Shown: positions 26,808 to 64,000, numbered from the stretch's first letter. The stretch is DNA of 64,000 bases from IMGVR_UViG_3300035183_000733:186001-250000, one strand, 5' to 3'. A program made the numbers and translations. Notes: generated from the sequence alone by a model not told the origin.

Positions 26808-26830
26808 ATTTTAGTCGTTCTTGTAATATG

Positions 26831-27036: not shown

Positions 27037-27044
27037 AAACTCGG

Positions 27045-27113: not shown

Positions 27114-27119
27114 AATTAA

Positions 27120-27235: not shown

Positions 27236-27238
27236 TTG

Positions 27239-46499: not shown

Positions 46500-47456
46500 A
46501 TGAGGACCCTGCACATAGGATTTACCGTACCCGCACTCTGCAAGGCGTTATCGGACGCATCGAGCGAATACCTGTTCCTCGACTGGACTCTGTGGACCTC
46601 CGTGCCCAACAACACGGCGGCTCTTCACGCGAAGACGTTAGAGACGGCCGAGCGGTTCAAACCAGACCTGATATTCCTGCACGTGCAATCACCGGGTGTC
46701 TACACGCCGGAGGTGCTCGCCAAGCTACCGGGGTTTAAGGTGAACTGGACCTGGGACTTTCGAAAACTTACGCCTCAGTGGATGATTGATTGTGGGAGGT
46801 CCGTGGACGTAACCGCGTTCACCAACGATGAGGATGTTATGTTCATGCGCGCCCTCGGCATGAACGCCGAGTTCATCCAGAGCGGATTCAACGATGATAT
46901 ATTCAGGCCAGACGGTGGCGTGGGAGAATACCCACAGATAGTTTTCATGGGCAACAACTACCCAAAGGAAGACTACGATTTCCCCCTGGCAGACTATAGA
47001 ATCAAGATGGTCAACACGCTGTCGTCCAAGTACGGTACAAATTTCGGAGTGTACGGATTCGGGTGGGGTAACGACATGCGTAACTTCATGTACAGGGAGG
47101 CCAAGGAGGCCGAGTGCTACAGGAGCTCTAAGGTGGCCATAAACGTGTCACACTTCGACGCGCTCAGGTACACATCAGACCGCATGCTACGCCTAATGGG
47201 CAGCGGGGCACTGTGCTTGTCTAAGTGGTACCCCGGCATAGAACTCGATTTTGAAGACAAGATCAATATAAGAGTATGGCACGATTTGGATGAACTCGAT
47301 GAACTTATAGAATACTACCTTGACGAGAGGAACAAGGACGAGAGGATAAGAATATCGCAGGCAGGTTGCGAACTGGTTCACCGCAACTATACGTGGAACC
47401 ACATGGCGGACAAAATTAAAAACCTGGTAACTAATGATTCATACGTTCGGAGATAG
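46500..47456 (+). CDS. CgeB-family/GT-B glycosyltransferase
   Basis: FMGNNY, YRSSKVAINVSH...TSDRMLRLMGSG. Confidence 0.7.
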   Translation: MRTLHIGFTVPALCKALSDASSEYLFLDWTLWTSVPNNTAALHAKTLETAERFKPDLIFLHVQSPGVYTPEVLAKLPGFKVNWTWDFRKLTPQWMIDCGRSVDVTAFTNDEDVMFMRALGMNAEFIQSGFNDDIFRPDGGVGEYPQIVFMGNNYPKEDYDFPLADYRIKMVNTLSSKYGTNFGVYGFGWGNDMRNFMYREAKEAECYRSSKVAINVSHFDALRYTSDRMLRLMGSGALCLSKWYPGIELDFEDKINIRVWHDLDELDELIEYYLDERNKDERIRISQAGCELVHRNYTWNHMADKIKNLVTNDSYVRR

Positions 47457-48018
47457 TCACGCTTGGTTCGCCTGGGACCAGATCGAGGGGGTTTCTACAA
47501 ACAGGATAGGACCGATAACGGCGCAGAGTTTCGGCCGTAAGAAATTGGAGATACTGGATATATCCGAGCCGAGGTTCAATGTGGCGCCCGGCGATTACGT
47601 ATGCTTCTCGTTCGGAGAGATAGACTGCAGGTGCCACATAGGCAAATTCAGGTCGAGCAGCAGGATGCTGATGGACAGTATCGCAAAAAATTACTTCGAG
47701 GCCATAAATGCCAACATCGAAAAGATGCCAGGGGTGAAGGTCATGGTGTACAACATCCCTCCGACCCTCAGGAAGGCGGATGCTAAAGAGAACGTGGATT
47801 TCCCATTTTATGGGGAAGATGCGGAGCGCGCAGAGTACATAAGGTACATGAACGAAAGGTACAAAGAACTGTGTGGCGCCAACGATTTCTTATTTGTGGA
47901 TGTTTACAATGATTATGCGGACAAATACGGGTTCCTTCAGAAGGAACTTAGCGACAACATGATACACATACAAGACCCTGTGTACATAAGGGAGTTCGTA
48001 AAAAATAATATAGTGTGA
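47434..48018 (+). CDS. SGNH/GDSL hydrolase-like protein
   Basis: FGDSH, FGEIDCR, DNMIH. Confidence 0.65.
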   Translation: MIHTFGDSHAWFAWDQIEGVSTNRIGPITAQSFGRKKLEILDISEPRFNVAPGDYVCFSFGEIDCRCHIGKFRSSSRMLMDSIAKNYFEAINANIEKMPGVKVMVYNIPPTLRKADAKENVDFPFYGEDAERAEYIRYMNERYKELCGANDFLFVDVYNDYADKYGFLQKELSDNMIHIQDPVYIREFVKNNIV

Positions 48019-48332
48019 TGAAGGATATAATCCTTAACTACATAAAGAAAGAATTCGGTAGTCAAGACCGCAGCGAAAACAGGAGGCACCACTACTCGTA
48101 CTGCTATGCTCCATTTGAGAAGTGTACGTGCAACGATTTGTTCGATGTCAATTATGATACGTCACTGATAAACGGCGGATACATCGACTCGTTTTCGATG
48201 GTGGTCGTGCTGGTGTTCATAGAGAATGAGTTCGACATACAGGTGCCGGACGCTCTCGCGATACCGGAGAACTTTGATACGGTCAATAAAATGGTGGATC
48301 TGATAAAAAGAATAAAAGACAAAGATGAATAA
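48015..48332 (+). CDS. Acyl/aminoacyl carrier protein with a His/Cys-rich insert
   Basis: GGYIDSF phosphopantetheine motif; IENEFDIQVP...ENFDTV. Confidence 0.7.
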   Translation: MMKDIILNYIKKEFGSQDRSENRRHHYSYCYAPFEKCTCNDLFDVNYDTSLINGGYIDSFSMVVVLVFIENEFDIQVPDALAIPENFDTVNKMVDLIKRIKDKDE

Positions 48333-48945
48333 GTACTTCGACAAGATATTCTGCGTCAACCTTGATAAGCGTACTGACAAATGGGAACTGTGCCTGAAGG
48401 AATTCGAGCAGGCCGGCATCGACGTCGTACGGTTCTCCGCAGTCGACGGAAGCACCATTGCATTGCCGCCAAACTGTGCAATAACGCCTGGCGAAGTCGG
48501 GTGTTCGCTAAGTCACACCACCATTCTAAAGAGAATGCTGCACGAGGGATGGGAGAGGATTCTGATCCTCGAGGACGACATAGAGTTCTCCGTGCACGCG
48601 CCGGCCCAGTTCCACCAATGGATCGGTCAGGTGCCTGCCGATTGGGACATGCTGTATCTCGGGGGCAACCACATAGCCCACCCGATACCGGTGACGCAAA
48701 ATGTGTCCAAGATAGTTAGGACGTACACGACGAGCCACTACGGCATAACCAAGAAGATGGCGGCCGAGGTGATAGCAGAGGTGGAGAAGTTCAAATCCCA
48801 GATAGACGTCACGTATACCGATTTTCAGAAAACACACAACTGCTACGTGTTCAATCCGAGCATAGCGTGGCAGAAGCCGGGGCACAGCGACATACAGAAC
48901 GCATATATGGACTACACCAGACTAATGAAACCTCCAGGACAATAA
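48325..48945 (+). CDS. GT25-family glycosyltransferase
   Basis: CVNLDKRTDKW, RFSAVDG, GCSLSH, ILEDDI. Confidence 0.8.
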   Translation: MNKYFDKIFCVNLDKRTDKWELCLKEFEQAGIDVVRFSAVDGSTIALPPNCAITPGEVGCSLSHTTILKRMLHEGWERILILEDDIEFSVHAPAQFHQWIGQVPADWDMLYLGGNHIAHPIPVTQNVSKIVRTYTTSHYGITKKMAAEVIAEVEKFKSQIDVTYTDFQKTHNCYVFNPSIAWQKPGHSDIQNAYMDYTRLMKPPGQ

Positions 48946-49850
48946 TGTATCCACTGATAAACGGCAATAGAAAATTCATACTGTACTGGAACGCGAGGTG
49001 CGCCTGCACGTCTCTCAAAAACTGGTTCTACTTCGTCGACCGCGATACCTACTCGCACGTGGCATTGATAAACGGCAACGGGGTTTCTCTGCCCTCCAAC
49101 AGGGTGCACATGGTCGTACCCTACATAGAAATCCCGTTCAAAATATCCAACGACGAAAATTTAAAGGACTACGTAAGCATCCTCGTGACCCGCAACCCAG
49201 TGGACAGACTTGTGTCGGTTTTGAACCATTCTGTTCTTGAAGTGCTCGGTGTGACAAACCTGAACAAACACAAGATTGAGCGGATGGAGGACCTGCTGAG
49301 GTTTCTGGAAGAACGGGACATGGACTCCAATATAGAGCACCATCTAAATCTGCAGTGCCTGTTTCCGGACAACCACAACTGCCACAAAGGACCGATAAGG
49401 GACCGGTTCAACCACATACTGCGGATAGAAGACGGCCCTGTCATACCACGAATAAACCAGATCCTCGGCACAAACGTTCCGGACTTCAGGGAGAACATAT
49501 CTGACAAGGACTCGTACGTCCCATTCCCGGAGCAGGTTGAACGAATTAAAAAATTATACGCGTGGGACTACTTCCACTTCTACCCGGACGATGACGGCAT
49601 AATAAACAATTCGTACTACAAGTTCTACCCGTACGAACAACCTTCAGAATACATCCCAAAGTTCGGAGACTGTAACACCGATATAATAATAATGCAAAAC
49701 CGAATGATACATCTCGGCATGAACGTGTCCTGCACTGGTGTATACGACGAACAGACAAGAGCGGCCATAATACAGTGGCAATCGGATAACGGCATGGACA
49801 TAACTGGAGAGCTTGACGATAAAACTAAGAAATACATTAGAGGTCTATGA
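48945..49850 (+). CDS. Sulfotransferase-family protein with a C-terminal peptidoglycan-binding domain
   Basis: NARCACTSLK, RNPVDRLVS; GVYDEQTRAAIIQWQSDNGMDITGELD; start moved to 48945. Confidence 0.55.
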   Translation: MYPLINGNRKFILYWNARCACTSLKNWFYFVDRDTYSHVALINGNGVSLPSNRVHMVVPYIEIPFKISNDENLKDYVSILVTRNPVDRLVSVLNHSVLEVLGVTNLNKHKIERMEDLLRFLEERDMDSNIEHHLNLQCLFPDNHNCHKGPIRDRFNHILRIEDGPVIPRINQILGTNVPDFRENISDKDSYVPFPEQVERIKKLYAWDYFHFYPDDDGIINNSYYKFYPYEQPSEYIPKFGDCNTDIIIMQNRMIHLGMNVSCTGVYDEQTRAAIIQWQSDNGMDITGELDDKTKKYIRGL

Positions 49851-50590
49851 TAACATTCAGCAATCTCGGCAAATACGGCCGCCTCGGCAACCAGATGTTC
49901 CAGATAGCATCCGTTATTGGAATAGCTCGCGCCAACGGACACGAATACATATTCCCAGAGTGGAAGTACTCACACTACATGAAAAAAGAGCTCCCTGCCG
50001 GAATAGTGCCGGCTACGAAGGTGGACGAGGTAGGGTTTCATTACGGCGAGATAAAGGTCGGCGAGGGCATCTTTGATATTGTAGGATACCTGCAGTCATG
50101 GCGGTACTTCGACAAGTACAAAGAGGAGGCTCTCGGGTACTTCGAGCTAAAGCCAGAGCACGCCGAAAAAATAGACGCGCTCGCGGCATCGTTCGGAGAC
50201 AATACCTGTTCTTTGCATATAAGGAGGACGGACTATGTGAATCTGTCGCAACACCATCCGGTCATGCCCATGGCATATTACACCAGGGCTATGGAGGTGA
50301 TGGGTGATTGTACGTTTGTCATATTCTCTGACGATATAAACTGGTGTAGGGAGAATTTTGTAGGTAATAAGTTTGTTTTTGTAGACGAGCAGCACCCGGA
50401 CGTATACGACCTGATGTTGATGTCCAAGTGCAAGCACAACGTCATAGCAAACTCGAGCTTCAGCTGGTGGGGCGCGTACCTTAATAAAAACCCCAACAAA
50501 CGAGTTATAGCGCCTGGCAAATGGTTCGGACCTGCGTACGACAACCTCGATACAAAGGACTTGTTGCCAGAGAACTGGTCAAAAATATAA
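49847..50590 (+). CDS. GT11 alpha-1,2-fucosyltransferase-like
   Basis: GRLGNQMFQ, SLHIRRTDY, IANSSFSWWGAYL. Confidence 0.85.
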   Translation: MITFSNLGKYGRLGNQMFQIASVIGIARANGHEYIFPEWKYSHYMKKELPAGIVPATKVDEVGFHYGEIKVGEGIFDIVGYLQSWRYFDKYKEEALGYFELKPEHAEKIDALAASFGDNTCSLHIRRTDYVNLSQHHPVMPMAYYTRAMEVMGDCTFVIFSDDINWCRENFVGNKFVFVDEQHPDVYDLMLMSKCKHNVIANSSFSWWGAYLNKNPNKRVIAPGKWFGPAYDNLDTKDLLPENWSKI

Positions 50591-50604
50591 AGAATAAATA
50601 TACT

Positions 50605-51126
50605 ATGCCAATAAAGAAAGATACATTCAAGAAATACCTAAATCCCTGCCTCGTAGAAACGGGTTCTTACATGGGTGATGGTATACAAGGGGCGCTTGAC
50701 GCCGGGTTCAAAAGGGTCATATCTATAGAGCTGTCCGAGAAATTCTACAACCACTGCGTTGCAAGATTCAAGGATAATCCAAACGTCAAGATAGTGCAGG
50801 GCGACTCCGCCGACGTGCTATACGATGCGATAAAGGATGTCGATACTCCCATAACGTTCTGGCTCGACGGGCACTGGTCCGCCGGTGAGACTGCGTACGG
50901 CAAGAAGAACTGCCCGCTCATAGAGGAGTTCGAGCAGATCCAGCGGCACGGCATCAAGAACCACATAATTCTCGTGGACGATATGCGCTGCTGGCAGGTA
51001 GAGGACCCGGAGATCAAGTTCGGAGAGAACGACATAAAGGAGAAAATCCTACAAATAAATGAAGGATACAAATTCTCGTACGAGGACGGACACATACCGA
51101 ATGATATTTTAGTCGCAAAACTATGA
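50605..51126 (+). CDS. Class I SAM-dependent methyltransferase-like
   Basis: VETGSYMGDG, SIELS, FWLDGHWS. Confidence 0.7.
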   Translation: MPIKKDTFKKYLNPCLVETGSYMGDGIQGALDAGFKRVISIELSEKFYNHCVARFKDNPNVKIVQGDSADVLYDAIKDVDTPITFWLDGHWSAGETAYGKKNCPLIEEFEQIQRHGIKNHIILVDDMRCWQVEDPEIKFGENDIKEKILQINEGYKFSYEDGHIPNDILVAKL

Positions 51127-51740
51127 TGACACCAGAACAGCTACACAACCACTTCATGTCGGAGATACGAAGGTGGTTCGACAACAGGGGAGACCAGACG
51201 CACAGGGTAAACTATGCGCTAACGCAGGATTCTGTAGTCATCGATCTCGGCGGGTACGAGGGCAAATGGGGTAAGACCATCAGCGACATGTACGGATGCA
51301 CGATACACGTGTTCGAGCCAGTGGCCTCGTTCTGCCAGAACATCAAAGCGATGTTCGCCAACAGCCCAAAGGTGCACGTTTACCAGACCGCGCTCGGTCA
51401 CGAGAAAAGCGATGCAACCATAACGATGTCGGCAGATGGATCGGGCATGTTCGCGGAGGGCGACGAGAAGGTGCCTATAACTATAGACTCGGTGCACGAG
51501 TTCCTCGCAAACATACAGAAGGTGGACCTGATAAAGATAAACATAGAGGGCGCCGAATACGACCTACTTGACTGCCTGACTACAGATGAACTTTTGAAGC
51601 TCGATAATATTCAAGTACAATTCCATACGTTTTATCCGGAGTGCCAGCAGCGCAGGGACGCTATAAGGACACGCCTATCAAGGACACACGTACTTACATA
51701 CAATTACGATTTTGTTTGGGAAAATTGGAAACTAAAATAA
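51123..51740 (+). CDS. FkbM-family methyltransferase
   Basis: DLGGYEG, FEP, KINIEGAEY. Confidence 0.8.
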   Translation: MMTPEQLHNHFMSEIRRWFDNRGDQTHRVNYALTQDSVVIDLGGYEGKWGKTISDMYGCTIHVFEPVASFCQNIKAMFANSPKVHVYQTALGHEKSDATITMSADGSGMFAEGDEKVPITIDSVHEFLANIQKVDLIKINIEGAEYDLLDCLTTDELLKLDNIQVQFHTFYPECQQRRDAIRTRLSRTHVLTYNYDFVWENWKLK

Positions 51741-51741
51741 C

Positions 51742-53397
51742 ATGGGATATTTCAGCAAACAGTACAAAAGCAAGTTGGTACATTTTGTACAGAAGAAACT
51801 GAACCAGCAACAAAAACAAGAAGAAGTGAGCACACCACAATCACCAGTCAGCCAGGAGGATTTGGATGATTTCAAGCCAGAGCAGGTAGTCGGCAGCTTG
51901 CCGGCTCCGCTAACCCCGCCGGCAACTAAGAAGAAGGTGCCGCTTGCCGACACTCTGTTCGGGCACGTGCCGGACGACAGACGTTATTTCGACTGGGATC
52001 GTAACGTTAACGCGTACAACTATGTGTTCATGACGGATGCGAGCATCAAGAATCACGGGATGTTTAACGGCAAGACTAAGTACGCATGGATGATTGAGTC
52101 ACCAGAGATAACAACAGACGAGTATGGGTGGCTTGCTCAGAATGCAACGCAGTTCAACAAGGTATTTACGTTCAAGCGATCATTGCTCGACTCCGATCCT
52201 GTCAGGTTCAAGTTTGTTCCGGGCGGGTCATGCTGGATAAAGGAGAAGGATTGGGGACTGCACCCCAAGACCAAACTGGTGTCGATGATAACGTCAAACA
52301 AGAACTTCACAAGCGGACATCATCTACGCCACAGAATCGTGCAACGCCTGCGCTCTAAGATTGACTTATACGGGCGCGGGTTCAACGACATACCGGATAA
52401 GATAGAGGGTTTGAAAGATTACATGTTCTCCTTTGCGATAGAGAACACGAAGGAGGATTATTACTTCACGGAGAAGCTGATAGATTGCTTCATGACCGGC
52501 ACTGTTCCGATATACTACGGATGCCCGTCCATTGCTCAGTTCTTTAATCCGAACGGCATAATACAGATAGACAACCTGGCCGAGGCCGAGACGATGCTTA
52601 ACTCCCTGACGCCTGATATGTACCAGAAGATGCTGCCGGCGATAAGGGACAACTATGAGCGCTGCATAAGGCAGTTCCTATCATACGAAGACTTCATGTA
52701 CTTCAACTACCCTGAACTTCTGTTCGGACTCGGGTCTTCTCCAAGTCCATTAAACGATGTGGTGGACGAAGTGTACTGCATAAACCTCGAGAGAAGGCAC
52801 GATAGATGGCTCGAGGTTTCTCAGCAATTTGACGTGCACAACATCAAGGTGACGCGCTGGCTTGCGGTGGACGGATGGAAGATCGAGGGCACGCACCACA
52901 TGAGGCACGGAGATATGCAAGGCGACAAGATAAAAGGTGCCGTCGGATGTCTGCGTTCGCATCGCAATGCCATAAAGGACGCGCTCGACAAAGGTCACAA
53001 TTCTATATGTGTGTTTGAGGATGACGTTGTACTGCAGCCCGACTTCAACAAAAGATTCGTGAAGCTAATGTCCACTGTTCCCAAAGACTGGGAAATGCTG
53101 TACATTGGATGCCACTGGCACGGACTACCAAACCCGAGACACATAGGCAATAACGTATATTCGCTCAACTGCTTCGGAGTGTTCGGCGTATTGATACGCG
53201 GTCAGCACATGCTACAGAGGATATACGAAGTCACTAAGGGAGAGGAGATGACGCTCGACGATTACCTGTGCTACAGGGTACAACCTGGTCACAAGGTGTA
53301 TACGACCATACCATTCTTGGTCAAAGTAAAGGAGGACTTTTCTGATATTGCCAACCAGTTTGCCGACTACAAAATAGTCAGCAAGTATTTCTACTAA
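51742..53397 (+). CDS. Fusion: GT10-like fucosyltransferase plus GT25 glycosyltransferase
   Basis: YMFSFAIEN..YFTEKLIDCF..GTVPIYYG; CINLERRHDRW, GCLRSH, VFEDDV. Confidence 0.75.
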   Translation: MGYFSKQYKSKLVHFVQKKLNQQQKQEEVSTPQSPVSQEDLDDFKPEQVVGSLPAPLTPPATKKKVPLADTLFGHVPDDRRYFDWDRNVNAYNYVFMTDASIKNHGMFNGKTKYAWMIESPEITTDEYGWLAQNATQFNKVFTFKRSLLDSDPVRFKFVPGGSCWIKEKDWGLHPKTKLVSMITSNKNFTSGHHLRHRIVQRLRSKIDLYGRGFNDIPDKIEGLKDYMFSFAIENTKEDYYFTEKLIDCFMTGTVPIYYGCPSIAQFFNPNGIIQIDNLAEAETMLNSLTPDMYQKMLPAIRDNYERCIRQFLSYEDFMYFNYPELLFGLGSSPSPLNDVVDEVYCINLERRHDRWLEVSQQFDVHNIKVTRWLAVDGWKIEGTHHMRHGDMQGDKIKGAVGCLRSHRNAIKDALDKGHNSICVFEDDVVLQPDFNKRFVKLMSTVPKDWEMLYIGCHWHGLPNPRHIGNNVYSLNCFGVFGVLIRGQHMLQRIYEVTKGEEMTLDDYLCYRVQPGHKVYTTIPFLVKVKEDFSDIANQFADYKIVSKYFY

Positions 53398-53398
53398 T

Positions 53399-55267: not shown

Positions 55268-55277
55268 AATTTAAAAG

Positions 55278-56116: not shown

Positions 56117-56125
56117 ATCTTATAT

Positions 56126-57945: not shown

Positions 57946-57978
57946 TAACGAACTCTTGTTTTCTTATATATCAAAGAG

Positions 57979-58006
57979 AAAAGCCCGACCTGCTAAGATC
58001 GGGCTT
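57979..58006 (-). terminator. Probable intrinsic terminator
   Basis: AAGCCCGA/TCGGGCTT stem with a short T-run. Confidence 0.5.
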
Positions 58007-58025
58007 GTTTCTTGAAAGCCGGCGC

Positions 58026-58268
58026 TTAAGCCTTAGCTTCTGCCACAGGAGCTGTTTCTGCTGTCGCAGGAGTTGCTGTGGCCTCAGGCTTCTGCTCTAC
58101 AGCGAACACTGATACCGCTTTGTCGAGGAGAGCTGCATCCTTGAGGGTGTATACTCCTTTAGACTGTGCGAAGTGAACGCCTTGGATAAGAAGACCAAGT
58201 GCTTGCTGTGGCGTCAGATTCTCAGGAACCTGGTTGTTTGCCGCCGGTTGTTGAACGTTGTTTTCCAT
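58026..58268 (-). CDS. Small hypothetical protein
   Basis: 80-aa ORF. Confidence 0.55.
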   Translation of the reverse strand: MENNVQQPAANNQVPENLTPQQALGLLIQGVHFAQSKGVYTLKDAALLDKAVSVFAVEQKPEATATPATAETAPVAEAKA

Positions 58269-58395
58269 GGAAACGTTTGGTTTAAGTTACTATTGGATCA
58301 TTATATGCAGGCAGAACTTAGATGTTTCATCGACGGCGGCACGTTTTTCGTTAAGCACCGCCACCGTAAGGGTCATACAAATTATGGAATAATTT

Positions 58396-60939
58396 TTACG
58401 AACATTTCGAACTTCCACACGAAGTACAGGTCAAACACCCCTCCTGGAATATTACAGACTCGGACCCGCAGTCCTTGCACTTCTTATCGGTCGCCCGAGT
58501 GCCGTCCGGGATGTACTTCTTGATCATCCTCTGGATGCCACCCTTCCACGTGGTTATCACCTCGTCATCGAGATTCAATGAAGTGATAAGATCTACCACA
58601 TAAGGCAGGGGCATTCCATGCCTCAGAATTCCTGACAGCATCTTGGCGTAATTCCAGTAATGCGGGTCGAAAGACTTGTTCAACCACTCAACCACAACTT
58701 CCTCACCCTTGTCCACGTAGATGAAGTCGTACTTTGATCCACTGTCGGTTTTGGTTTTGCGTATACGGCCAGTATCGATCTTTCCGGGCACCTTTATGTG
58801 CTCGGCCTTACCTGTGAACACTTCATAAGGTCTGCCATCAAACAGCCCAACAAAACCTATCCACTGTTCGCCCTTGTTCATGAACCTGTGAATGTCGCAC
58901 TCGAGAGTCTTCGGACGGCGAGGCGCATTATTGTCCTTGGCCTTAGGCTTGTCCTCCTCCTTCTCCTTCTTCTCCACAAGAACTCCGGAACGTGACCCGT
59001 CCCTGTATATGGTGCAACCCTTGCAGCCGGCCTTCCAAGCCGCGACGTAAACCTCGTTTACGAGTTCCTCCGTCACGTGATTGGGCAGGTTAACCGTAAC
59101 CGATATTGAGTGGTCAATCCATTTCTGTATCGCACCCTGCATGTTAACCTTCTCCACCCAGTCAACATCATTAGCCATGGCCTTGTAGTAAGGTGACTTC
59201 TCAATTACTTTATTGAGCTCCTCGGTAGACATGTGAGCAACCGCATCTGGATCGTATCCGTTGACAATCATCCAGGTTTTGAAGTGGTGGTGGAACACGT
59301 TATACTCCTCCCAGCTATCTCCGACCTCATCAACGAAATCGACCCTCGCGCTCTTGTCGTTAGGGTTGATCTTCTTACGACGCATGTACGCAGCCATGAA
59401 CGCGCACTCTACACCTGACGTTGTCTGCGTCATCAAAGACACAGTGCCGGTAGGAGCTATGGTCAACAGAGCGATATTTCTACGACCGTACTTGGCGAGC
59501 AATTCGCGCAACTCCGGGTCTGCTTCCTTGAGCCTGTTCAAGAACGGATTGTTGACCTCGAGCTTCTCATCATAAATAGGAAACGCGCCGCGTTCCTTCG
59601 CCATAATTGCCGAACTCTTGTATGCGGATATGGCGAGTGCCTTGTGCACAGACTCGGCAAATGCAGTTGCCTCCTTTGTACCATAACGAAGTCCAAGCGC
59701 TGCAAGCATATCACCCTCGGCCGTAACACCAGTTCCAGTCCTGCGACCATTAGCGCACTTCTGACGAATCTCCTCCCACATAGAAAGCTCGTTGAACTTA
59801 ATCTCTGCGCTCTCTGGATCAGATTTGATTTTGGTTATAATATCATCAATCTTCTCGAGCTCAAGCTCGACAATATTGTCCATCATCCTCTGCGCTATGC
59901 GAACGTGCTTGTCGAACAACTCAAAATCGAAGTAAGCATCCGGAGTGAACGGATTACGAACATACGCATAAAGATTCAAAGCAAGTAATCGGCAAGAATC
60001 GCCAGAACATAATGGCAACTCACCACACGGGTTAGTAGATACGGTCCTGAACCCGAATGCAGAATAGCAATCGGCCGGAGATTCCTTAATGATCTTATCC
60101 CAGAACAAAACGCCCGGCTCCGCAGACTTCCACGCATTATGAATGATCTTCTTCCATAATGCAGCGGCGTCGATCTCCTTGTGAATGCGCCCATCGCCGT
60201 ATATCGGCCACTGCTGCTTGTACATCCGGCCCGCAAGTACGGCATCCATGAAATCATCGTGGATCTTCACAGAAACGTTAGCTCCGGTGACCTTCGTGCT
60301 ATCCATCTTAGCATCGATGAAAGCCTCGGACTCCGGGTGCCGGATAGAAACGGACAACATAAGTGCCCCACGACGCCCATCCTGCGCGACCTCTCGGGTT
60401 GTGTTCGAATAGCGCTGCATGAATGGAACTATACCAGTGGACGTGATTGCTGCATTATTGACGGCAGTGCCCGCTGGCCTAATGTCGGACAAGTCCGTGC
60501 CCACGCCACAACGCCTCTTCTGTAGCTGTGCAATGCGCTCGTCTATCCTCATGATGCCACCGTAAGAATCACCCATTCCGTCTGGGTTACCAACCACGAA
60601 ACAGTTGGACAAAGAAATCTTCTGCAGGTTGTTGCCGATACCTGCCATCGGGCTGCCTTGAGGTATTATGTACCTGAACCTATCGAGTAGAGAAAAGAAC
60701 TCTTCCTCACTCACAGGGTTCGGGAACTTGGCCTCGACCCTGGCGATCTCCGACGCAATCCTACGGTGCATGTCCTCCGGGGTCAGCTCGTAGATGTTGC
60801 CATCGGAATCCTTCAATGCGTACTTGTTAATCCAAACACTCGCCGCCAACTCGTCGCCACCGAAGTAGCTTTTTGCCTTCTCGAGCACCTCAGCGTAGCT
60901 GTAGGATTTTTTCTCTGTTTTAGTTTCGATTACTTCCAT
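58396..60939 (-). CDS. nrdJ: Class II (adenosylcobalamin-dependent) ribonucleotide reductase, Bacteroidota-like
   Basis: SNCFV, STNPCGELPL, IAPTGT, GCTIYRDGSR, C-terminal CxxC...CxxCG.SKC; AASVWINKYALKD N-terminus. Confidence 0.92.
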   Translation of the reverse strand: MEVIETKTEKKSYSYAEVLEKAKSYFGGDELAASVWINKYALKDSDGNIYELTPEDMHRRIASEIARVEAKFPNPVSEEEFFSLLDRFRYIIPQGSPMAGIGNNLQKISLSNCFVVGNPDGMGDSYGGIMRIDERIAQLQKRRCGVGTDLSDIRPAGTAVNNAAITSTGIVPFMQRYSNTTREVAQDGRRGALMLSVSIRHPESEAFIDAKMDSTKVTGANVSVKIHDDFMDAVLAGRMYKQQWPIYGDGRIHKEIDAAALWKKIIHNAWKSAEPGVLFWDKIIKESPADCYSAFGFRTVSTNPCGELPLCSGDSCRLLALNLYAYVRNPFTPDAYFDFELFDKHVRIAQRMMDNIVELELEKIDDIITKIKSDPESAEIKFNELSMWEEIRQKCANGRRTGTGVTAEGDMLAALGLRYGTKEATAFAESVHKALAISAYKSSAIMAKERGAFPIYDEKLEVNNPFLNRLKEADPELRELLAKYGRRNIALLTIAPTGTVSLMTQTTSGVECAFMAAYMRRKKINPNDKSARVDFVDEVGDSWEEYNVFHHHFKTWMIVNGYDPDAVAHMSTEELNKVIEKSPYYKAMANDVDWVEKVNMQGAIQKWIDHSISVTVNLPNHVTEELVNEVYVAAWKAGCKGCTIYRDGSRSGVLVEKKEKEEDKPKAKDNNAPRRPKTLECDIHRFMNKGEQWIGFVGLFDGRPYEVFTGKAEHIKVPGKIDTGRIRKTKTDSGSKYDFIYVDKGEEVVVEWLNKSFDPHYWNYAKMLSGILRHGMPLPYVVDLITSLNLDDEVITTWKGGIQRMIKKYIPDGTRATDKKCKDCGSESVIFQEGCLTCTSCGSSKCS

Positions 60940-60993
60940 CTCTCTTCTGAAAAATTGTTTGTTTTTTTTTATAGAACAATCCCCGAAAAAGTC

Positions 60994-62916
60994 TCACTTT
61001 CTTTCGGGCAGCTCTGTATATATTTCCGCATCTTTTAAGATTTCCAAAACACCCGCAACTACCTCATTTGGAGTCACAAAGGCTGATTTATCTAAGGCAA
61101 CATCGCGCCACCATCTGAACTGGTCCGGGCGCAAATATTCTCTTGATTTTAAGAGGTTTAGGTGGATGGAATGTCCAAAAATTTTTGGGTCCGACTTCGA
61201 AAAAATAACCACACCTTTTTTGTTGTGGTACGCTGCAAAATGAGGGAAGAACGAGTCCACCGACACGAACGTATCGCATGCGTTGAGGATCTTTAGGAGT
61301 TTATCGGGCGCCGCGTTCAGTATGACTTCGTCGCATCCGACCAACTTCTCGCCAGCAACACCTACCTGTATGGTGTAAGCGCCGAGTGCGCGAAGCATGC
61401 CAACCACCTCCGGCCAGTCCTGGTAATTCTTGGCGTTTTCCATCCCCGGCAACTTAGCAGCCCATGGGGCTATCACTATGACTTTACCATCGAGTGAGCC
61501 CTTCTCGAAATCCGATACATCAGGAGTCAACTCTAACTTTGGTTCATTGCTCGGGATAGTATCAACGCTGGATGTCATCCCAGCGAACTTGATAGCGAGG
61601 TCGAACCTCCTCTCTGCGGTAACTGTCACCTTCGCTATTGTATCGACGAGTTCGTCAGGGCCGCCAAATAACTCGTTGACGCACCTGACAACACCCGGCC
61701 AGTCGCGCTCGAAGTAGTCGTGAAACATTATCACGGCGCCGTCCTTCAGCTTGGGCAGGTAGTTCTTTACATCGTTCATGACCGACTCGTAATCGTGCAT
61801 GCTATCTATGAATATGAAGTCGAACTCGTCGTTCTTCAGCAACTGGTGCACGTTCTGCGACATACCAATGAGCGGTGTGACGTTGTTGAGATGCGCGGTG
61901 TTCCTTGCGAAATCAACGTAGGTGGTGAGCGACTGCATCTGAGTCTGTCCGCCGTTGTCCGCCTTGAACGTGTCTATGCACACGATGCTCGTCGCCTTCG
62001 GCGCCATAAAACAAGCGCTCTTGCCCTTGTACGAGCCTATCTCTATACATCTGCGGCCCTCGGCGTTTTTTGCGAGGAACTCGCCCTCCGCCCTGGAGAG
62101 CCATCCCTCGACATTCATTGGATCTTGTAAATTCATCTTCCGTTGTATTCTTAATTTAGCGGCATGCGAGTCCTCTGCCGTATAGTACGAGCCCGTGCTC
62201 TTCCATGTGTAGATTATGCTCGGCTTCTTTGCGTGTACGTGTTTGACCCGATACTTCGCGGCAACGCGCAACCAGTACTCCCAGTCCTCCATCGGGACGG
62301 CATCCTCGGAGAACTGACCGACGTCTATACACTCCCTCTTCATGACCACGGTTGATATGAAGATATAATTGCCCTGCTTGAGCAACTCATAATCGAACTC
62401 CTCCGGATTCGGTATGCCGAATATCTGCAAAGGCTCGCCCTTCTCGTTCTCGCACTCGACGTTCGAATACACCATATCATACCCGTCATCAATGGCCTGC
62501 AAGCTACGGGCCAGGTGCCATGGGAACCACATGTCGTCGCTATCACAAAATGCCACGTGAGTGAAAGCTTCCGGCGTGTTGTCCAAACTCCTTATGTACT
62601 CGAGTGCAACATTTCGTGCAGCGGCCGGTCCGCGGCCGCTGCCATTAAGGATTACGAGCCTCCGAGTGTGCTCTTGCACGATACTCTCGAGAAGTTCCCG
62701 GCTCCCGTCGGTGGCTCCGTCGTCGATGGCGAGAAGTATAATCTCGTTCGGACCGCGCATCTCGGTGGGGTTCAATGCCACGGCGGCGGACCTGAGAATT
62801 AGGCTGTTGCCATCCGCGTCTTTGGTATTCTTGAACGGCATGACTATTGCAATGCGTCCGGCAAAATACGGCGGATCTGGCTTGTCGCATCTCTGGCTCT
62901 CAATATCATTTATCAT
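60994..62916 (-). CDS. Three-domain fusion: GT2 glycosyltransferase, class I methyltransferase, GT9-like domain
   Basis: DDGATDG, FCDSDD; EIGSYKGKS, FIDSMHDY; VSVDSFFPHFA. Confidence 0.75.
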   Translation of the reverse strand: MINDIESQRCDKPDPPYFAGRIAIVMPFKNTKDADGNSLILRSAAVALNPTEMRGPNEIILLAIDDGATDGSRELLESIVQEHTRRLVILNGSGRGPAAARNVALEYIRSLDNTPEAFTHVAFCDSDDMWFPWHLARSLQAIDDGYDMVYSNVECENEKGEPLQIFGIPNPEEFDYELLKQGNYIFISTVVMKRECIDVGQFSEDAVPMEDWEYWLRVAAKYRVKHVHAKKPSIIYTWKSTGSYYTAEDSHAAKLRIQRKMNLQDPMNVEGWLSRAEGEFLAKNAEGRRCIEIGSYKGKSACFMAPKATSIVCIDTFKADNGGQTQMQSLTTYVDFARNTAHLNNVTPLIGMSQNVHQLLKNDEFDFIFIDSMHDYESVMNDVKNYLPKLKDGAVIMFHDYFERDWPGVVRCVNELFGGPDELVDTIAKVTVTAERRFDLAIKFAGMTSSVDTIPSNEPKLELTPDVSDFEKGSLDGKVIVIAPWAAKLPGMENAKNYQDWPEVVGMLRALGAYTIQVGVAGEKLVGCDEVILNAAPDKLLKILNACDTFVSVDSFFPHFAAYHNKKGVVIFSKSDPKIFGHSIHLNLLKSREYLRPDQFRWWRDVALDKSAFVTPNEVVAGVLEILKDAEIYTELPERK

Positions 62917-64000
62917 GACCAGGCCCTCCCCTTCACGTAAAGCTCCCTGAATGCGTCGAGCAACGTACCGTTCCAGTTCTCTTCAACCCCGAACTGATAC
63001 ACGTTCATCTTGCTAATACGTTTTTCGTCGAACATCTGCTTGGCGTCCGCGATGCTCATCAGATCCACGCCGGAATCGTCGAACACGTGGGGGAAGCACG
63101 CAGCTATGGTTATGCGGTCATCCGGGTACTTGGCCTTGACCTCTGGTAGAATCATCTTAAAGCTCCAGTGATCTCCGAGCCCGCAATCGAGAACGATATA
63201 TCTGCGTCCCTTCAGCTTCACCCCCCACTCCTCCATCTTGCGCCTGAATACGGCCTCGTCGGCCTCCCATAGTTTGGAATCGTCGAAACTGCGTATTCCA
63301 CCCACGGTCTCCCTCAAATGATGAGTCACGGCAGAGCGGTCTATCAGGAGCTGCCACCCCGCACGTTTCATCTCGTGCGTGAATATAGTCTCCTCCCTGT
63401 GGCCAACTGTAGACAGCTCCTTACAGTACCCGTGCGCGGCTGCCACCTTCCTGAACACGAAGGTGCTGTACAGATGGTCTGCCGGTATAATGCCAGTTCC
63501 GACAGACCACTGTATGTTGCTGGACGAGCATATCTCCGATATTTTTGTGGAGCAAGGGCCGGGCACATTCTGCCCCGGAGTCGGGACGCTGCCCCCAACG
63601 GCGCCTACCCCTTCGTCGAAGCATGCCATCAGTTTCTCGAGGACATCCGGCTCGGCGGAGTTGTCGTCGTCGAGCCTCCATAGAAACTCGGTGCCCGCCA
63701 TGTCGATGGCCTTCTGGTGGTTTAGCACCTGACCCTTTCCCTCGCCGAACACCACGTCCCAATTTATGCCGGCATCGAGGAGCATCTTGAACAGATGCTG
63801 GTATACGCTGTACTTGCGCAGGTCGACCGGCTTCTCGTTGTAGTCGTCCATGAATATGATCAGACGCTTTGGCTTCAGCTTCTGGTTTATCACTGACATT
63901 ATGGCGAGCGGCAGCGTTGAGAAGTACCTGCCCCTGGTAGATATGTAGCAGGTCACGTCCGCGTGCGTAGCGTAATAAGCATTCTTGGTGCGATGCTCCA
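62913..64000 (-). CDS. GT2-family glycosyltransferase, start beyond the right edge
   Basis: WRLDDD, HREETIF; frame stays open upstream of the track start at 63956. Confidence 0.75.
   Translation of the reverse strand, partial: EHRTKNAYYATHADVTCYISTRGRYFSTLPLAIMSVINQKLKPKRLIIFMDDYNEKPVDLRKYSVYQHLFKMLLDAGINWDVVFGEGKGQVLNHQKAIDMAGTEFLWRLDDDNSAEPDVLEKLMACFDEGVGAVGGSVPTPGQNVPGPCSTKISEICSSSNIQWSVGTGIIPADHLYSTFVFRKVAAAHGYCKELSTVGHREETIFTHEMKRAGWQLLIDRSAVTHHLRETVGGIRSFDDSKLWEADEAVFRRKMEEWGVKLKGRRYIVLDCGLGDHWSFKMILPEVKAKYPDDRITIAACFPHVFDDSGVDLMSIADAKQMFDEKRISKMNVYQFGVEENWNGTLLDAFRELYVKGRAWS

What the first reader, a model, noticed from the sequence alone, without database searches (positions are those of the whole stretch)
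46500..64000. Large phage glycan-building and decoration cluster
Seen: at least eight glycosyltransferase genes (CgeB-like, GT25, GT11, a GT10+GT25 fusion, several GT2, a GT2-MTase-GT9 fusion), plus three stand-alone methyltransferases, an SGNH hydrolase, a carrier protein and a sulfotransferase. They form two converging blocks. No nucleotide-sugar synthesis genes lie in this window. Established: GT10 and GT11 are fucosyltransferases, GT25 enzymes build LOS, and FkbM-type enzymes O-methylate. Inference: the phage builds a fucosylated, methylated, possibly acylated or sulfated glycan on the virion, on DNA or on the host surface.
Basis: partly seen in the sequence, partly recalled or inferred. 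Interest (0 to 1): 0.6.

Follow-up and report, generated by a model that had tools for sequence, protein, structure and literature searches.

The report
Huge-phage fucosyl glycan-building gene cluster
A 374-kb uncultured phage carries about 18 kb of intact, selected genes for building a fucose- and galactose-type sugar chain with methyl, probably sulfate and perhaps acyl decorations, most likely to coat its own particle, though the target is unproven.

Summary
Window 46500-64000, continuing to about 64814 in the genome, has two converging gene blocks. They encode 8 glycosyltransferase genes with at least 9 supported GT domains: CgeB-like, GT25, GT11, a GT10+GT25 fusion, a new GT-A family, and GT2s. 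They also encode 4 methyltransferase domains, a sulfotransferase fused to a peptidoglycan-binding domain, an ATP-grasp ligase, and a weak SGNH plus DltC-like carrier pair.

The GT9 call is unsupported.

All shared genes are under purifying selection. Fucosyltransferase and sulfotransferase motifs are intact. The phage encodes an APS kinase elsewhere, but no nucleotide-sugar enzymes of the two families searched and no flippase, polymerase or priming transferase among the ORFs screened.

The module recurs in other huge phages, often with GT25, GT10, GT11 and once GT6.

Both late sub-operons carry the promoter-like motif found before portal, prohead protease/capsid, sheath and baseplate genes. 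One cluster protein copies the capsid protein's N-terminal segment.

Best reading (about 0.45): late, cytoplasmic glycosylation of virion proteins. Rivals are host-envelope remodelling (about 0.25) and DNA glycosylation (about 0.1).

The parts
46434..46478 (+). Tandemly duplicated (35-nt period) promoter-like motif GTATATAATA, two copies, 23 and 58 nt upstream of the first + block gene
   Evidence: Motif RTATATAAKA occurs 6 times in the window against 0.26 expected, always upstream of ORFs. One copy is conserved in L033.
46500..47456 (+). CgeB-like glycosyltransferase (Glyco_trans_1_2)
   Evidence: 67.3 bits, cut-off 25. 74% aa identity to the L033 ortholog, dN/dS 0.13. 47% identity to L044.
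47434..48018 (+). SGNH/GDSL-like esterase or acyltransferase. Part of a 2-gene insertion that is absent from L033.
   Evidence: 28.2 bits, below the cut-off of 32.9. N-terminal GDS motif. ESM Atlas look-alikes are viral, including giant-virus GT8 fusions, and TM is 0.84 to an SGNH cluster. Absent in L033. Present in the ~95%-identical wastewater contig.
48015..48332 (+). Carrier protein, DltC/ACP-like, with a DSF serine motif
   Evidence: PP-binding 17.5 bits; DltC NF003464 at 37.2 bits, E 2.3e-9; both below their cut-offs.
48325..48945 (+). GT25 glycosyltransferase (LOS beta-galactosyltransferase family), EDD motif
   Evidence: 57.5 bits. 88% identity to L033, dN/dS 0.03.
48945..49850 (+). 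Sulfotransferase (Sulfotransfer_2) fused to a C-terminal PG_binding_1 domain. The true start overlaps the GT25 stop codon.
   Evidence: PHROG 3347, Gal-3-O-sulfotransferase, E 2e-5. Only 3 homologous 90%-identity clusters in 5.8 billion proteins. The fold attempt failed (pLDDT 46).
49847..50590 (+). GT11 alpha-1,2-fucosyltransferase-family protein, motifs intact
   Evidence: (86.4 bits).
50605..51126 (+). Small class-I SAM methyltransferase-like protein. Absent from L033.
   Evidence: Gly-rich SAM-binding-type motif, read by eye. (structure TM 0.87-0.88 to O-methyltransferase/FkbM clusters). No Pfam hit.
51123..51740 (+). FkbM-family methyltransferase 1
   Evidence: 35.7 bits. 90% identity to L033.
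51742..53397 (+). GT10 (alpha-1,3-fucosyltransferase family) + GT25 fusion with a disordered N-terminus
   Evidence: aligns to H. pylori FucT 5zoi/2nzw, E 5.5e-13, across the FENT..Y.TEK motif.
53399..54049 (+). FkbM-family methyltransferase 2
   Evidence: 43.3 bits.
54039..54494 (-). 151-aa protein. Its C-terminal module copies the N-terminal segment of the phage's gp23-like capsid protein and ends in a poly-Lys tail. It overlaps the upstream GT-A gene by 10 nt.
   Evidence: BLASTP E 8e-11; hhalign 95.5%.
54485..55267 (-). New GT-A glycosyltransferase family with no Pfam model, invariant DxDE motif
   Evidence: 388 homologs at E<=0.001; pLDDT 95.9; SunS/ThuS, TarS/TarP, SpsA.
55278..56116 (-). 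GIY-YIG + NUMOD3 homing endonuclease split into two ORFs around a 57-nt direct repeat. An insertion, not part of the pathway.
   Evidence: Absent in L033.
56126..56812 (-). GT2-like (GT-A) protein with an EDDD motif. Family assignment is weak.
   Evidence: 18.2 bits, below the cut-off of 23.3. 71% identity to L033 and 51% to L044.
56809..57945 (-). ATP-grasp ligase (YheC/D-like, sugar-transfer-associated, D-Ala-D-Ala-ligase-like)
   Evidence: Paralog at about G000:174117-175082.
57962..58006 (-). Intrinsic-terminator hairpin (57981-58006) followed by the promoter-like ATATATAAGA (57962-57971) before the ATP-grasp gene
   Evidence: (arrangement conserved in L033 and L044).
58026..58268 (-). 80-aa conserved ORF with a Thr/Ala/Pro-rich tail, function unknown
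   Evidence: (89% identity).
58396..60939 (-). Ribonucleotide reductase large chain. It sits inside the block and keeps that position in relatives. It is not a glycan enzyme.
   Evidence: (283 bits).
60994..62916 (-). GT2 + Methyltransf_24 fusion with a C-terminal region of uncertain fold (the GT9 call is unsupported)
   Evidence: (40% identity to L044).
62913..64000 (-). Double-GT2 protein. It continues beyond the window to about 64745-64814.
   Evidence: (95.6 bits, two stretches).

Best explanation
The region is a glycan-assembly module of a T4-like huge phage, probably one that infects Bacteroidota.

Its enzymes are soluble and would work in the cytoplasm on host-made nucleotide sugars (GDP-fucose, UDP-galactose and others). 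In the proposed order of action:
1. GT-A and GT2 enzymes start and extend a chain.
2. The GT25 domains add galactose-type residues.
3. GT11 and GT10 add alpha-1,2- and alpha-1,3-type fucose.
4. Four SAM methyltransferase domains O-methylate sugars.
5. A PAPS-dependent sulfotransferase adds sulfate, with PAPS supply helped by the phage's own APS kinase.
6. An ATP-grasp ligase may add an amide-linked group.
7. In this strain only, an SGNH + carrier pair may add an acyl group.

The two sub-operons that hold most of the transferases appear to be transcribed with the virion structural genes. The most likely acceptor is therefore a virion protein, either the capsid or the Ser-rich collagen-like fibres.

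Shown here: gene content, motif integrity, purifying selection, conservation in relatives, lack of export genes among those screened, the shared promoter motif and the capsid-mimic protein. Inferred only: sugar identities, order of steps, late timing and the acceptor.
For: Gene content and catalytic motifs.

Selection: pN 0.06-0.21 against pS 0.6-0.77 in all 14 shared genes.

Sulfate supply: APS kinase at G000:325151-325600 above curated cut-offs.

Soluble machinery only. None of the 20 cluster proteins has a predicted TM segment. The most hydrophobic polytopic ORFs of the genome that were scanned are an M50 peptidase, TerC, a weak ABC permease and proteins without a Pfam hit.

Shared promoter-like motif:
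- RTATATAAKA occurs 6 times in the window against 0.26 expected, always upstream of ORFs.
- Genome-wide, 41 of 89 TATATAA sites lie within 90 nt upstream of ORFs.
- Those ORFs include portal, the prohead protease with the capsid gene directly downstream, sheath, baseplate wedge and three collagen-like proteins, as well as the CgeB-GT and ATP-grasp genes.
- The terminator-plus-promoter arrangement before the ATP-grasp gene is conserved in L033 and in the 482-kb phage L044.

Capsid mimic: the 151-aa cluster protein, overlapping the conserved GT-A gene, shares a roughly 40-90-aa segment with the N-terminus of the gp23-like capsid protein.

Nearest folds of the GT-A include the peptide glycosyltransferases SunS/ThuS and the spore-coat enzyme SpsA.

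CgeB and YheC/D are spore-surface maturation families. This point rests on the family names and my own knowledge.

The SGNH look-alikes are fused to GTs in giant viruses.

Candidate acceptors: a 512-aa protein with 80 Ser among 88 G-X-Y triplets and a 974-aa protein with 27 of 31, both behind the same motif.

The module recurs in other huge phages together with GT25, GT10, GT11, FkbM and once GT6.
Against: - No glycan, glycoprotein or timing data exist, because the phage is uncultured.
- The promoter-like motif also precedes non-structural genes (topoisomerase IB, an AAA ATPase, an RNA ligase fusion) and, in L044, the RNR. Calling it 'late' is therefore an inference.
- The first half of the - block (two GT2 fusions, RNR, 80-aa ORF) lacks the motif.
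- The cluster sits among nucleotide-metabolism genes: guanylate kinase, the RNR and, in relatives, dUTPase/DCD, PolB exonuclease and gp32.
- GT25, GT10 and GT11 are classically LOS/LPS enzymes.
- The peptidoglycan-binding domain on the sulfotransferase is unexplained by a virion target.
- Collagen-like proteins do not co-occur consistently with the module.
- The capsid-mimic protein lies beside the GT-A in only 2 of 80 more distant IMG/VR loci.
- The capsid N-arm motif also occurs in relatives that lack the GT-A.
Confidence: 0.45

Rival explanations
1. Host-envelope remodelling. The soluble transferases work at the inner face of the membrane on host lipid-linked intermediates (LOS/LPS core, O-unit, capsule or Bacteroidota glycoprotein glycans), and host flippases export the product. 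This changes the cell surface to block superinfection or re-adsorption. It is the published reading of GT clusters in jumbo cyanophages.
For: - GT25, GT10, GT11 and GT2 are typical LOS/O-antigen families.
- FkbM methyltransferases and sulfotransferases occur in surface-polysaccharide loci (my knowledge).
- LPS glycosyltransferases are usually peripheral proteins without TM helices, so one search does not exclude this reading.
- The sulfotransferase carries a cell-wall (peptidoglycan) binding domain.
- Accessory genes vary between relatives in the way O-antigen loci do.
- Iyer et al. 2021 (PMC7824862) interpret jumbo-phage GT clusters this way.
Against: - No priming phosphoglycosyl transferase, flippase, polymerase or ligase was found in the genome.
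- The promoter-like motif is shared with portal, protease/capsid, sheath and baseplate genes. Late expression would leave little time for surface change.
- A conserved core kept at 40-54% identity across distant huge phages that presumably have different hosts fits a phage-intrinsic acceptor better.
- A capsid-mimic protein sits in the operon.
Confidence: 0.25
2. DNA hypermodification. Some of the transferases, for instance the highly conserved GT-A, glycosylate a modified pyrimidine in phage DNA to evade restriction, as in T4, RB69 and the metagenomic clusters of Pyle et al.
For: - The genome's only ThyA homolog has Asp at the position of E. coli N177, the change that confers dCMP specificity (PMC13326640 section 24).
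- The cluster sits beside a guanylate-kinase-family gene and contains an RNR. In relatives it sits beside dUTPase/DCD, PolB exonuclease and gp32.
- The GT-A fold hits include TarP/TarS, the same PDB neighbours reported for phage DNA GT-A enzymes (bioRxiv 2023.12.21.572611).
- The closest relative carrying the module (G010) has a T4-type dCMP-hydroxymethylase-like gene.
Against: - The ThyA homolog keeps L143 (linked to a methyl rather than a hydroxymethyl product) and D169 (so it is not the 5-hydroxy-dCMP synthase type). No hydroxyl acceptor is therefore predicted.
- No Tet/JBP dioxygenase was found.
- Across near-complete relatives the GT-A occurs with ordinary N177 thymidylate synthases or with none (G011-G014). 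The hydroxymethylase-like genes occur without the GT-A (G001, G004). There is no association.
- At least 9 GT domains, 4 methyltransferase domains and a sulfotransferase far exceed any known DNA glycan, which reaches three sugars at most.
- GT10 and GT11 act on oligosaccharide acceptors (my knowledge).
Confidence: 0.1
3. The module makes a glycosylated small protein or peptide, or another soluble glycoconjugate. The 151-aa or 80-aa ORF would be the acceptor, by analogy with glycocins. The product would be packaged in the head or released, rather than decorating the virion surface.
For: - The GT-A's best structural matches are the glycocin S-glycosyltransferases SunS/ThuS, which modify an adjacently encoded peptide.
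- The GT-A gene overlaps the 151-aa ORF. Small homologs of 78-94 aa follow the GT-A in L044, L223 and L126.
- The shared module starts at an LxE-like site resembling T4 prohead-protease sites (my knowledge) and ends in a poly-Lys tail, like packaged internal peptides.
Against: - Foldseek scores for SunS are not clearly better than those for TarS, TarP or SpsA.
- Adjacency holds in only 2 of 80 more distant loci.
- A peptide acceptor does not explain the need for more than 9 GT domains.
- The complex prediction could not be run.
Confidence: 0.08

Closest known systems
Autonomous glycosylation machinery of giant viruses: chlorovirus PBCV-1 A064R and A111/114R acting on the major capsid protein; mimivirus fibril glycosylation clusters
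   Same: - Virus-encoded, soluble, multi-domain glycosyltransferases, including GT+methyltransferase and GT+GT fusions.
- Fucose and methylated sugars.
- Cytoplasmic action without ER or export machinery.
- Clade-specific variable gene sets (PMC9614988, PMC4691112 and PMC10117803 listed; the enzyme details are from my knowledge).
- The SGNH look-alikes here are fused to GT8-type enzymes in Nucleocytoviricota.
   Different: - This is a tailed phage of bacteria.
- It has no nucleotide-sugar synthesis genes of the families searched.
- It adds a sulfotransferase-PG-binding fusion, an ATP-grasp ligase and a DltC-like carrier.
- No glycan has been observed.
Mycobacteriophage virion glycosylation (Freeman et al. 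2023, cited in PMC12619734)
   Same: Phage-encoded glycosyltransferases, sometimes with methyltransferases, that decorate capsid and tail-tube subunits. This is the only experimentally shown case of phage self-glycosylation that I am aware of.
   Different: - Those systems have 1-4 GT genes placed next to the capsid genes in 50-110-kb actinophages.
- This one has at least 9 GT domains in a 374-kb T4-like phage.
- The families differ here (GT10, GT11, GT25).
- This cluster sits between the baseplate and nucleotide-metabolism modules.
LPS/capsule-type gene clusters of jumbo cyanophages (such as P-SSM2), as reviewed by Iyer et al. 2021 (PMC7824862)
   Same: - Sporadic, polymorphic clusters of several GT families in large T4-like phages.
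- They are proposed to diversify surface polysaccharide.
   Different: - Those clusters usually include sugar kinases, nucleotidyltransferases and epimerases, which this genome lacks.
- A conserved core (GT-A, ATP-grasp, GT2-MT fusion, RNR) and a structural-gene-type promoter motif were found here.
Bacterial Lewis/H/ABO-like antigen pathways: H. pylori FutA/B/C with LOS galactosyltransferases; E. coli O86 (my knowledge)
   Same: - The same enzyme toolkit: a GT25-type galactosyltransferase, a GT11 alpha-1,2-FucT and a GT10 alpha-1,3-FucT.
- A relative (L223) adds a GT6 A/B-transferase-family gene.
- The GT10 motif region aligns to H. pylori FucT.
   Different: - Those pathways act on lipid-linked LPS with export machinery.
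- Linkage and sugar specificity of the phage enzymes are untested.
- The source is a microbial mat, with relatives in wastewater and soil, not an animal mucosa.
Phage DNA glycosylation systems: T4 alpha/beta-GT; RB69/DLP3 arabinosyl-5hoC (PMC13326640); 5mYOX/ThyS-associated GT clusters (bioRxiv 2023.12.21.572611)
   Same: - A phage GT-A with TarP-like fold neighbours.
- A ThyA homolog with the N177D change in the same genome.
- A nucleotide-metabolism neighbourhood.
   Different: - The diagnostic residues for hydroxymethyl or hydroxy products are not present.
- The GT-A does not co-occur with dCMP-modifying ThyA homologs.
- The enzyme count is far larger.

Membership tests
GT11 (Pfam PF01531, alpha-1,2-fucosyltransferase family) | Profile score above the curated cut-off | tested here: met
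   86.4 bits against 23.9. Whole-genome search gave 82.5 bits.
GT11 (Pfam PF01531, alpha-1,2-fucosyltransferase family) | Conserved motifs HxRRxD, SDD..WC and NS(S/T)FSWW (motif definitions from my knowledge) | tested here: met
   Read directly in the translation: HIRRTD, FSDDINWC, NSSFSWWGAY.
GT11 (Pfam PF01531, alpha-1,2-fucosyltransferase family) | Transfers L-fucose from GDP-fucose in alpha-1,2 linkage | not testable with these tools
   Needs an enzyme assay.
GT10 (Pfam PF00852, alpha-1,3/4-fucosyltransferase family) | Profile score above the cut-off, and the alpha-1,3-FucT motif FxxxFENxxxxxYxTEK | tested here: met
   48.9 bits against 23.9. Motif FAIENTKEDYYFTEK. Aligned to H. pylori FucT 5zoi/2nzw at E 5.5e-13 across this motif.
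GT25 (Pfam PF01755) | Profile score above the cut-off and an acidic DxD-type motif | tested here: met
   57.5 and 48.9 bits against 24. LEDD and FEDD motifs.
Sulfotransfer_2 (Pfam PF03567), PAPS-dependent carbohydrate sulfotransferases | Profile score above the cut-off | tested here: met
   31.6 bits against 22, E 2.4e-7. Independent PHROG 3347 'Gal-3-O-sulfotransferase' hit at E 2e-5 covering 5-214 of 219.
Sulfotransfer_2 (Pfam PF03567), PAPS-dependent carbohydrate sulfotransferases | 5'-phosphosulfate and 3'-phosphate binding motifs and the sulfotransferase fold | tested here: inconclusive
   The R..CTS and RNPVDRLVS segments are invariant in 4 homologs and resemble the PAPS motifs (my knowledge). 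The AF2 model was unusable (pLDDT 46). No PDB sequence match.
GT9 (Pfam PF01075, heptosyltransferase) | Profile score above the cut-off | tested here: not met
   16.5 bits against 22, with no stretch passing on its own. PDB sequence searches of both C-terminal regions were empty.
D-alanyl/acyl carrier protein (PP-binding; DltC) | Profile above the cut-off, a phosphopantetheine serine, and cognate ligase and PPTase | tested here: inconclusive
   PP-binding 17.5 bits against 20.8. DltC 37.2 bits against 68. A DSF serine motif is present. No AMP-binding ligase, PPTase or MBOAT in the genome.
SGNH/GDSL hydrolase | Profile above the cut-off and the catalytic GDS block | tested here: inconclusive
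   28.2 bits against 32.9. GDS at residues 6-8. Atlas structure TM 0.84 to an SGNH cluster.
GT-A fold glycosyltransferase (the 260-aa protein) | GT-A Rossmann-like fold with a DxD motif | tested here: met
   pLDDT 95.9. More than 400 PDB matches at E<=0.001, led by GT2 enzymes. Invariant D101, D103 and E104 in 41 homologs.
Wzx/Wzy- or ABC-dependent surface polysaccharide locus | Priming phosphoglycosyl transferase, flippase or ABC exporter, polymerase or ligase (polytopic membrane proteins) | tested here: not met
   No TM segment in any cluster protein. The polytopic ORFs that were scanned against Pfam are M50, TerC, a weak ABC permease or have no Pfam hit. The hydrophobicity scan is crude, and only 7 of 23 candidate ORFs were scanned.
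Phage DNA glycosylation pathway (5hmC / 5hoC type) | ThyA homolog with N177D plus L143D/E (hydroxymethyl) or D169N (hydroxy), or a 5mYOX/TET enzyme | tested here: not met
   N177D is present, but L143 and D169 are retained (criteria from PMC13326640). No Tet_JBP. No co-occurrence of the GT-A with D-type ThyA homologs.
Phage/virus virion self-glycosylation | Glycan covalently attached to virion proteins by virus-encoded transferases | not testable with these tools
   Indirect support only: a promoter motif shared with structural genes and a capsid-N-terminus mimic in the operon.

The most novel reading that the evidence does not exclude
A widespread clade of huge T4-like phages coats its capsid or Ser-rich collagen-like fibres with a Lewis/H-type (histo-blood-group-like) fucosylated glycan. 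The glycan would be methylated and, in this lineage, sulfated. A conserved, late-expressed module would build it in the cytoplasm. That module would be seeded by a previously unrecognised GT-A family that reads a peptide shared by the capsid protein's N-terminal arm and a family of small capsid-targeted proteins. This phage would boost PAPS with its own APS kinase for the sulfation step.
Probability: 0.15. Interest if true: 0.8.

Novelty: new variant of a known kind. Interest (0 to 1): 0.6.

Why it matters
To my knowledge, phage self-glycosylation has been shown experimentally only in mycobacteriophages, and complex virus-made glycans only in giant eukaryotic viruses. If huge phages of Gram-negative bacteria build a ten-sugar-scale, fucosylated, methylated and sulfated glycan on their particles, three things follow:
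- Autonomous viral glycosylation would extend to tailed phages.
- It could explain part of the 'extra' coding capacity of huge phages.
- It would bear on particle stability, adsorption, and evasion of host or grazer recognition.

The cluster also offers tractable enzymes: GT10+GT25 and GT2+methyltransferase fusions, a new GT-A family with 388 detected members, and a sulfotransferase-PG-binding fusion with almost no relatives.

A phage-encoded APS kinase without any sulfate-reduction gene, paired with a sulfotransferase, suggests that this auxiliary gene serves sulfation rather than sulfur assimilation.

Tried and rejected
- **Sulfotransferase fold.** A 4-sequence alignment gave pLDDT 46, which is unusable. 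PDB sequence searches for the sulfotransferase, the 260-aa protein, the small methyltransferase, the SGNH protein, GT11 and both putative GT9-like regions gave nothing useful.
- **Complex prediction.** There is no verdict.
- **Module in tail-sheath relatives.** Relatives chosen by tail sheath (G001-G009) lack GT11, the sulfotransferase, both GT2 fusions and the GT-A, except for a GT10/GT11 cluster in G006/G007. I first read this as 'accessory island'. I revised it when the capsid-closest relative G010/L044 (78% capsid identity) showed nearly the whole module.
- **Collagen-like proteins as obligate partners.** They are present in G000, G010, G004 and G006 but absent from G011-G018, which carry the GT-A. 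No consistent co-occurrence.
- **Capsid-mimic module as a universal neighbour of the GT-A.** It was found in only 2 of 80 IMG/VR loci.
- **DNA-modification link.** See the third rival. The co-occurrence test was negative.
- **Expression evidence.** The runs labelled RNA-Seq are probably DNA and are held only as contigs, so they give no evidence on transcription.
- **Other negatives.** Sigma-70-type promoters are not enriched (32 found against 23.9 +/- 5.0 in shuffles). Rfam finds nothing in the 129-nt repeat at the - block start. DNA-level search of the phage collection gave only a 163-bp hit.
- **Not run.** The large HMMER search was not used, because the family scans and the word search sufficed.

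Full report
**Context**

The window is bases 186001-250000 of a 373,759-bp IMG/VR virus record that CheckV rates complete.

- The tail sheath is nearest to metagenomic huge phages (LR756500 and relatives), Flavobacterium phage MaF61 and the Prevotella Lak megaphages.
- The terminase, portal, prohead protease and capsid protein are T4-like.
- The phage's APS kinase is closest to Bacteroidota genes, with Myxococcota and others mixed in, at 57-62% identity. A Bacteroidota host is therefore plausible but not shown.
- The DNA comes from a microbial-mat metagenome. A ~95%-identical strain lies on a 65.5-kb wastewater contig, and fragments occur in a soil run.

**The observation**

ORF listing and family scans confirm two converging, tightly packed blocks. 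Many stop and start codons overlap.

The + block (46500-54049) encodes, in order:
1. a CgeB-like GT
2. an SGNH-like protein
3. a DltC/ACP-like carrier
4. GT25
5. a Sulfotransfer_2 + PG_binding_1 fusion, whose true start at 48945 overlaps the GT25 stop
6. GT11
7. a 173-aa class-I methyltransferase-like protein
8. FkbM
9. a GT10+GT25 fusion
10. FkbM

The - block (54039 to about 64814) encodes, in transcription order:
1. a double-GT2 protein
2. a GT2+Methyltransf_24 fusion
3. a ribonucleotide reductase
4. an 80-aa ORF
5. an ATP-grasp ligase
6. a weak GT2-like protein
7. a split GIY-YIG/NUMOD3 homing endonuclease
8. a 260-aa protein
9. a 151-aa protein

The 260-aa protein has no Pfam, NCBIfam or PHROG hit. 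It folds with pLDDT 95.9 into a GT-A glycosyltransferase with an invariant DxDE motif. Its nearest PDB folds are SunS/ThuS, TarS/TarP and SpsA.

That gives 8 GT genes, at least 9 supported GT domains and 4 methyltransferase domains.

The SGNH and carrier calls rest on sub-threshold scores plus motif and look-alike evidence.

**Are the genes functional?**

- A related phage (contigs L033-L035) keeps the same order. Every shared gene has pN 0.06-0.21 against saturated pS 0.6-0.77.
- The GT11 and GT10 signature motifs are intact.
- The GT10 domain aligns to H. pylori alpha-1,3-FucT across its nucleotide-binding motif.
- The sulfotransferase keeps PAPS-type motifs that are invariant in its only four known relatives.
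- The phage encodes a bona fide APS kinase 75 kb away, next to an intein-bearing terminase. It has no ATP sulfurylase and no PAPS reductase. This points to PAPS as a sulfuryl donor rather than to sulfur assimilation.
- The genome has no SDR epimerase/dehydratase and no sugar nucleotidyltransferase. Donors must come from the host. Relatives carry GDP-mannose-dehydratase-type and epimerase genes beside their GT10 and GT11 genes.

**Conservation**

- The 260-aa GT-A family has 388 detected members on large phage contigs from many biomes.
- The capsid-closest relative (482-kb contig; capsid 78% identical) has almost the whole module: GT2-MT fusion, RNR, 80-aa ORF, ATP-grasp, GT2-like, GT-A, a small 151-like ORF, CgeB-GT, FkbM, a GT10-like gene, GT11 and GT25. 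It adds an epimerase, a DegT aminotransferase and a hexapeptide transferase, and it has no sulfotransferase.
- More distant loci pair the GT-A with GT25 (27 of 80), GT11 (20 of 80), GT10 and FkbM. One pairs it with a GT6-family gene.
- The picture is a conserved core with a variable, fucose/galactose-centred periphery.
- The SGNH + carrier pair, the small methyltransferase and the homing endonuclease are insertions relative to L033. The ~95%-identical wastewater strain covers the SGNH + carrier pair and the small methyltransferase; the laid stretch ended before the endonuclease.

**Where does the glycan go? Evidence favouring virion proteins**

1. *No export machinery.* No cluster protein has a TM segment. 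No flippase, polymerase or priming transferase was found among the genome's most hydrophobic ORFs.
2. *A shared promoter-like motif, (G/A)TATATAA(G/T)A.*
   - It occurs 6 times in the window against 0.26 expected, always just upstream of ORFs.
   - Genome-wide, 41 of 89 TATATAA sites lie within 90 nt upstream of ORFs.
   - Those ORFs include the portal, the prohead protease with the capsid gene directly downstream, the sheath, the baseplate wedge, three collagen-like proteins, the first gene of the + block (duplicated copy) and the ATP-grasp gene.
   - Before the ATP-grasp gene, a strong terminator hairpin followed by the motif is conserved in L033 and in the 482-kb phage.
   - The motif resembles the T4 late promoter (my knowledge). 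It also precedes some non-structural genes, so 'late' remains an inference.
3. *A capsid mimic in the operon.*
   - The 151-aa protein overlaps the GT-A gene by 10 nt.
   - It shares a segment with the N-terminus of the gp23-like capsid protein (BLASTP E 8e-11; hhalign 95.5%).
   - The segment begins at an LxE-like site and ends in a poly-Lys tail.
   - The same portable module sits on other N-terminal domains, including DUF5661, in related phages.
4. *Analogies.* CgeB and YheC/D are spore-surface maturation families. The SGNH look-alikes are fused to GTs in giant viruses. GT+MT fusions recall chlorovirus A064R (my knowledge).
5. *Candidate acceptors exist.* There is a 512-aa protein with 80 Ser in 88 G-X-Y triplets and a 974-aa protein with 27 in 31. 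Both sit behind the same motif.

**Counter-evidence and rivals**

- The cluster sits among nucleotide-metabolism genes, and its families are classic LOS/LPS families. The published reading of jumbo-phage GT clusters is host-surface modification (PMC7824862). The peptidoglycan-binding domain on the sulfotransferase fits an envelope context better than a virion one.
- For DNA glycosylation, the genome's only ThyA homolog has the dCMP-specifying N177D change. It keeps L143 and D169, so a methyl product is predicted rather than a hydroxymethyl or hydroxy one.
- No TET/JBP enzyme was found.
- Among near-complete relatives the GT-A and dCMP-type ThyA homologs do not co-occur.
- Collagen-like proteins and the capsid-mimic protein are not universal partners of the GT-A.

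**Comparison and novelty**

The module works most like the autonomous glycosylation systems of giant viruses and like mycobacteriophage virion glycosylation. Its enzyme toolkit is that of bacterial Lewis/H-type antigen synthesis.

Large GT clusters in huge phages are known in outline (PMC7824862; PMC12619734 reports four core GT families in 'moraphages').

Several features appear undescribed in the literature I could search:
- this conserved core
- the unrecognised GT-A family
- the GT10/GT11/GT25(/GT6) theme
- the sulfotransferase-PG-binding fusion together with a phage APS kinase
- the capsid-mimic protein

I rate it a new variant of a known kind, with interest 0.6.

**Limits**

- Everything about sugar identity, order of steps, timing and acceptor is inference from sequence.
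- The promoter analysis used a crude ORF caller.
- The hydrophobicity scan is simple.
- One fold failed, and the complex prediction could not be run.

Noticed in passing
G000:C1:291035-292123 (+), outside the window (locus L036:1501-2589): The genome's only thymidylate-synthase homolog scores as a true TS (362 bits). It has Asp at E. coli N177 (dCMP specificity) and Met at Q165, keeps L143 and D169, and has two insertions. It may make 5-methyl-dCMP, so the phage DNA could carry 5mC in place of C. Relatives that carry the GT-A have the normal N177.
   Followed up: partly
G000:C1:325082-325660 (+) (L006:9082-9660): A phage-encoded APS kinase (CysC) lies directly upstream of the terminase gene. 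No ATP sulfurylase or PAPS reductase was found in the genome.
   Followed up: yes
L006:9691-14518 (G000 about 325.7-330.5 kb): The T4-type large terminase appears as two ORFs (336 aa and 1276 aa). The second carries LAGLIDADG and Hint/intein domains, so one or more inteins interrupt the gene.
   Followed up: no
window 55278-56116 (-): The GIY-YIG/NUMOD3 homing endonuclease is split into 168-aa and 96-aa ORFs around a 57-nt exact direct repeat. The whole element is absent from the related phage L033.
   Followed up: partly
window 64735-64861 and G000:357065-357190: A 129-nt element is repeated at 93% identity. It covers the annotated start of the double-GT2 gene. The ATG is not conserved in the second copy, so the real start is probably about 23 codons downstream and the element is non-coding. 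Rfam gives no hit.
   Followed up: partly
window 26306-27315 (-): A cluster of six tRNA genes (Glu x2, Cys, Ala, Asp). ARAGORN reports one with a four-base anticodon (ttgc) and no assigned amino acid.
   Followed up: no
G000:72684-74222 (-), 360052-362976 (+), 161576-165067 (-): Three collagen-repeat proteins. Two are (G-X-S)n with Ser at nearly every Y position (80 of 88 and 27 of 31 triplets). All three sit behind the structural-gene-type promoter motif.
   Followed up: partly
L002:14753-18647 (G000 about 262.8-266.6 kb): An ABC permease (weak TauC/SaoP-like hit), an ABC ATPase and a 413-aa left-handed beta-helix protein lie about 12-16 kb beyond the cluster. The last resembles LpxD/NeuD sugar acyl- or acetyltransferases but scores below the cut-offs. 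It could be a further tailoring enzyme.
   Followed up: no
L006:6641-8817 (G000 about 322.6-324.8 kb): A 2H phosphoesterase with a weak Acb1 (anti-CBASS) hit and an ART-PolyVal ADP-ribosyltransferase lie near the APS kinase.
   Followed up: no
window 8258-8437 (-): A 132-aa ORF carries DUF5661. In related phages DUF5661 is fused to the capsid-N-terminus-like, poly-Lys module of the 151-aa cluster protein. Here the two parts are separate genes.
   Followed up: partly
G000:174117-175082 (+) (L039:1117-2082): A second, divergent copy of the YheC/D-like ATP-grasp ligase (24% identity to the cluster copy) lies 12 kb upstream of the window.
   Followed up: no
G010:C1:17333-17869, G001:C1:242731-243426, G004:C1:6152-6823 (loci L221, L217, L216): Related huge phages carry a T4-type dCMP-hydroxymethylase-like ThyA homolog, with Asp at both the N177 and L143 positions. 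In G010 it sits alongside a normal thymidylate synthase. Cytosine modification therefore differs between close relatives.
   Followed up: partly
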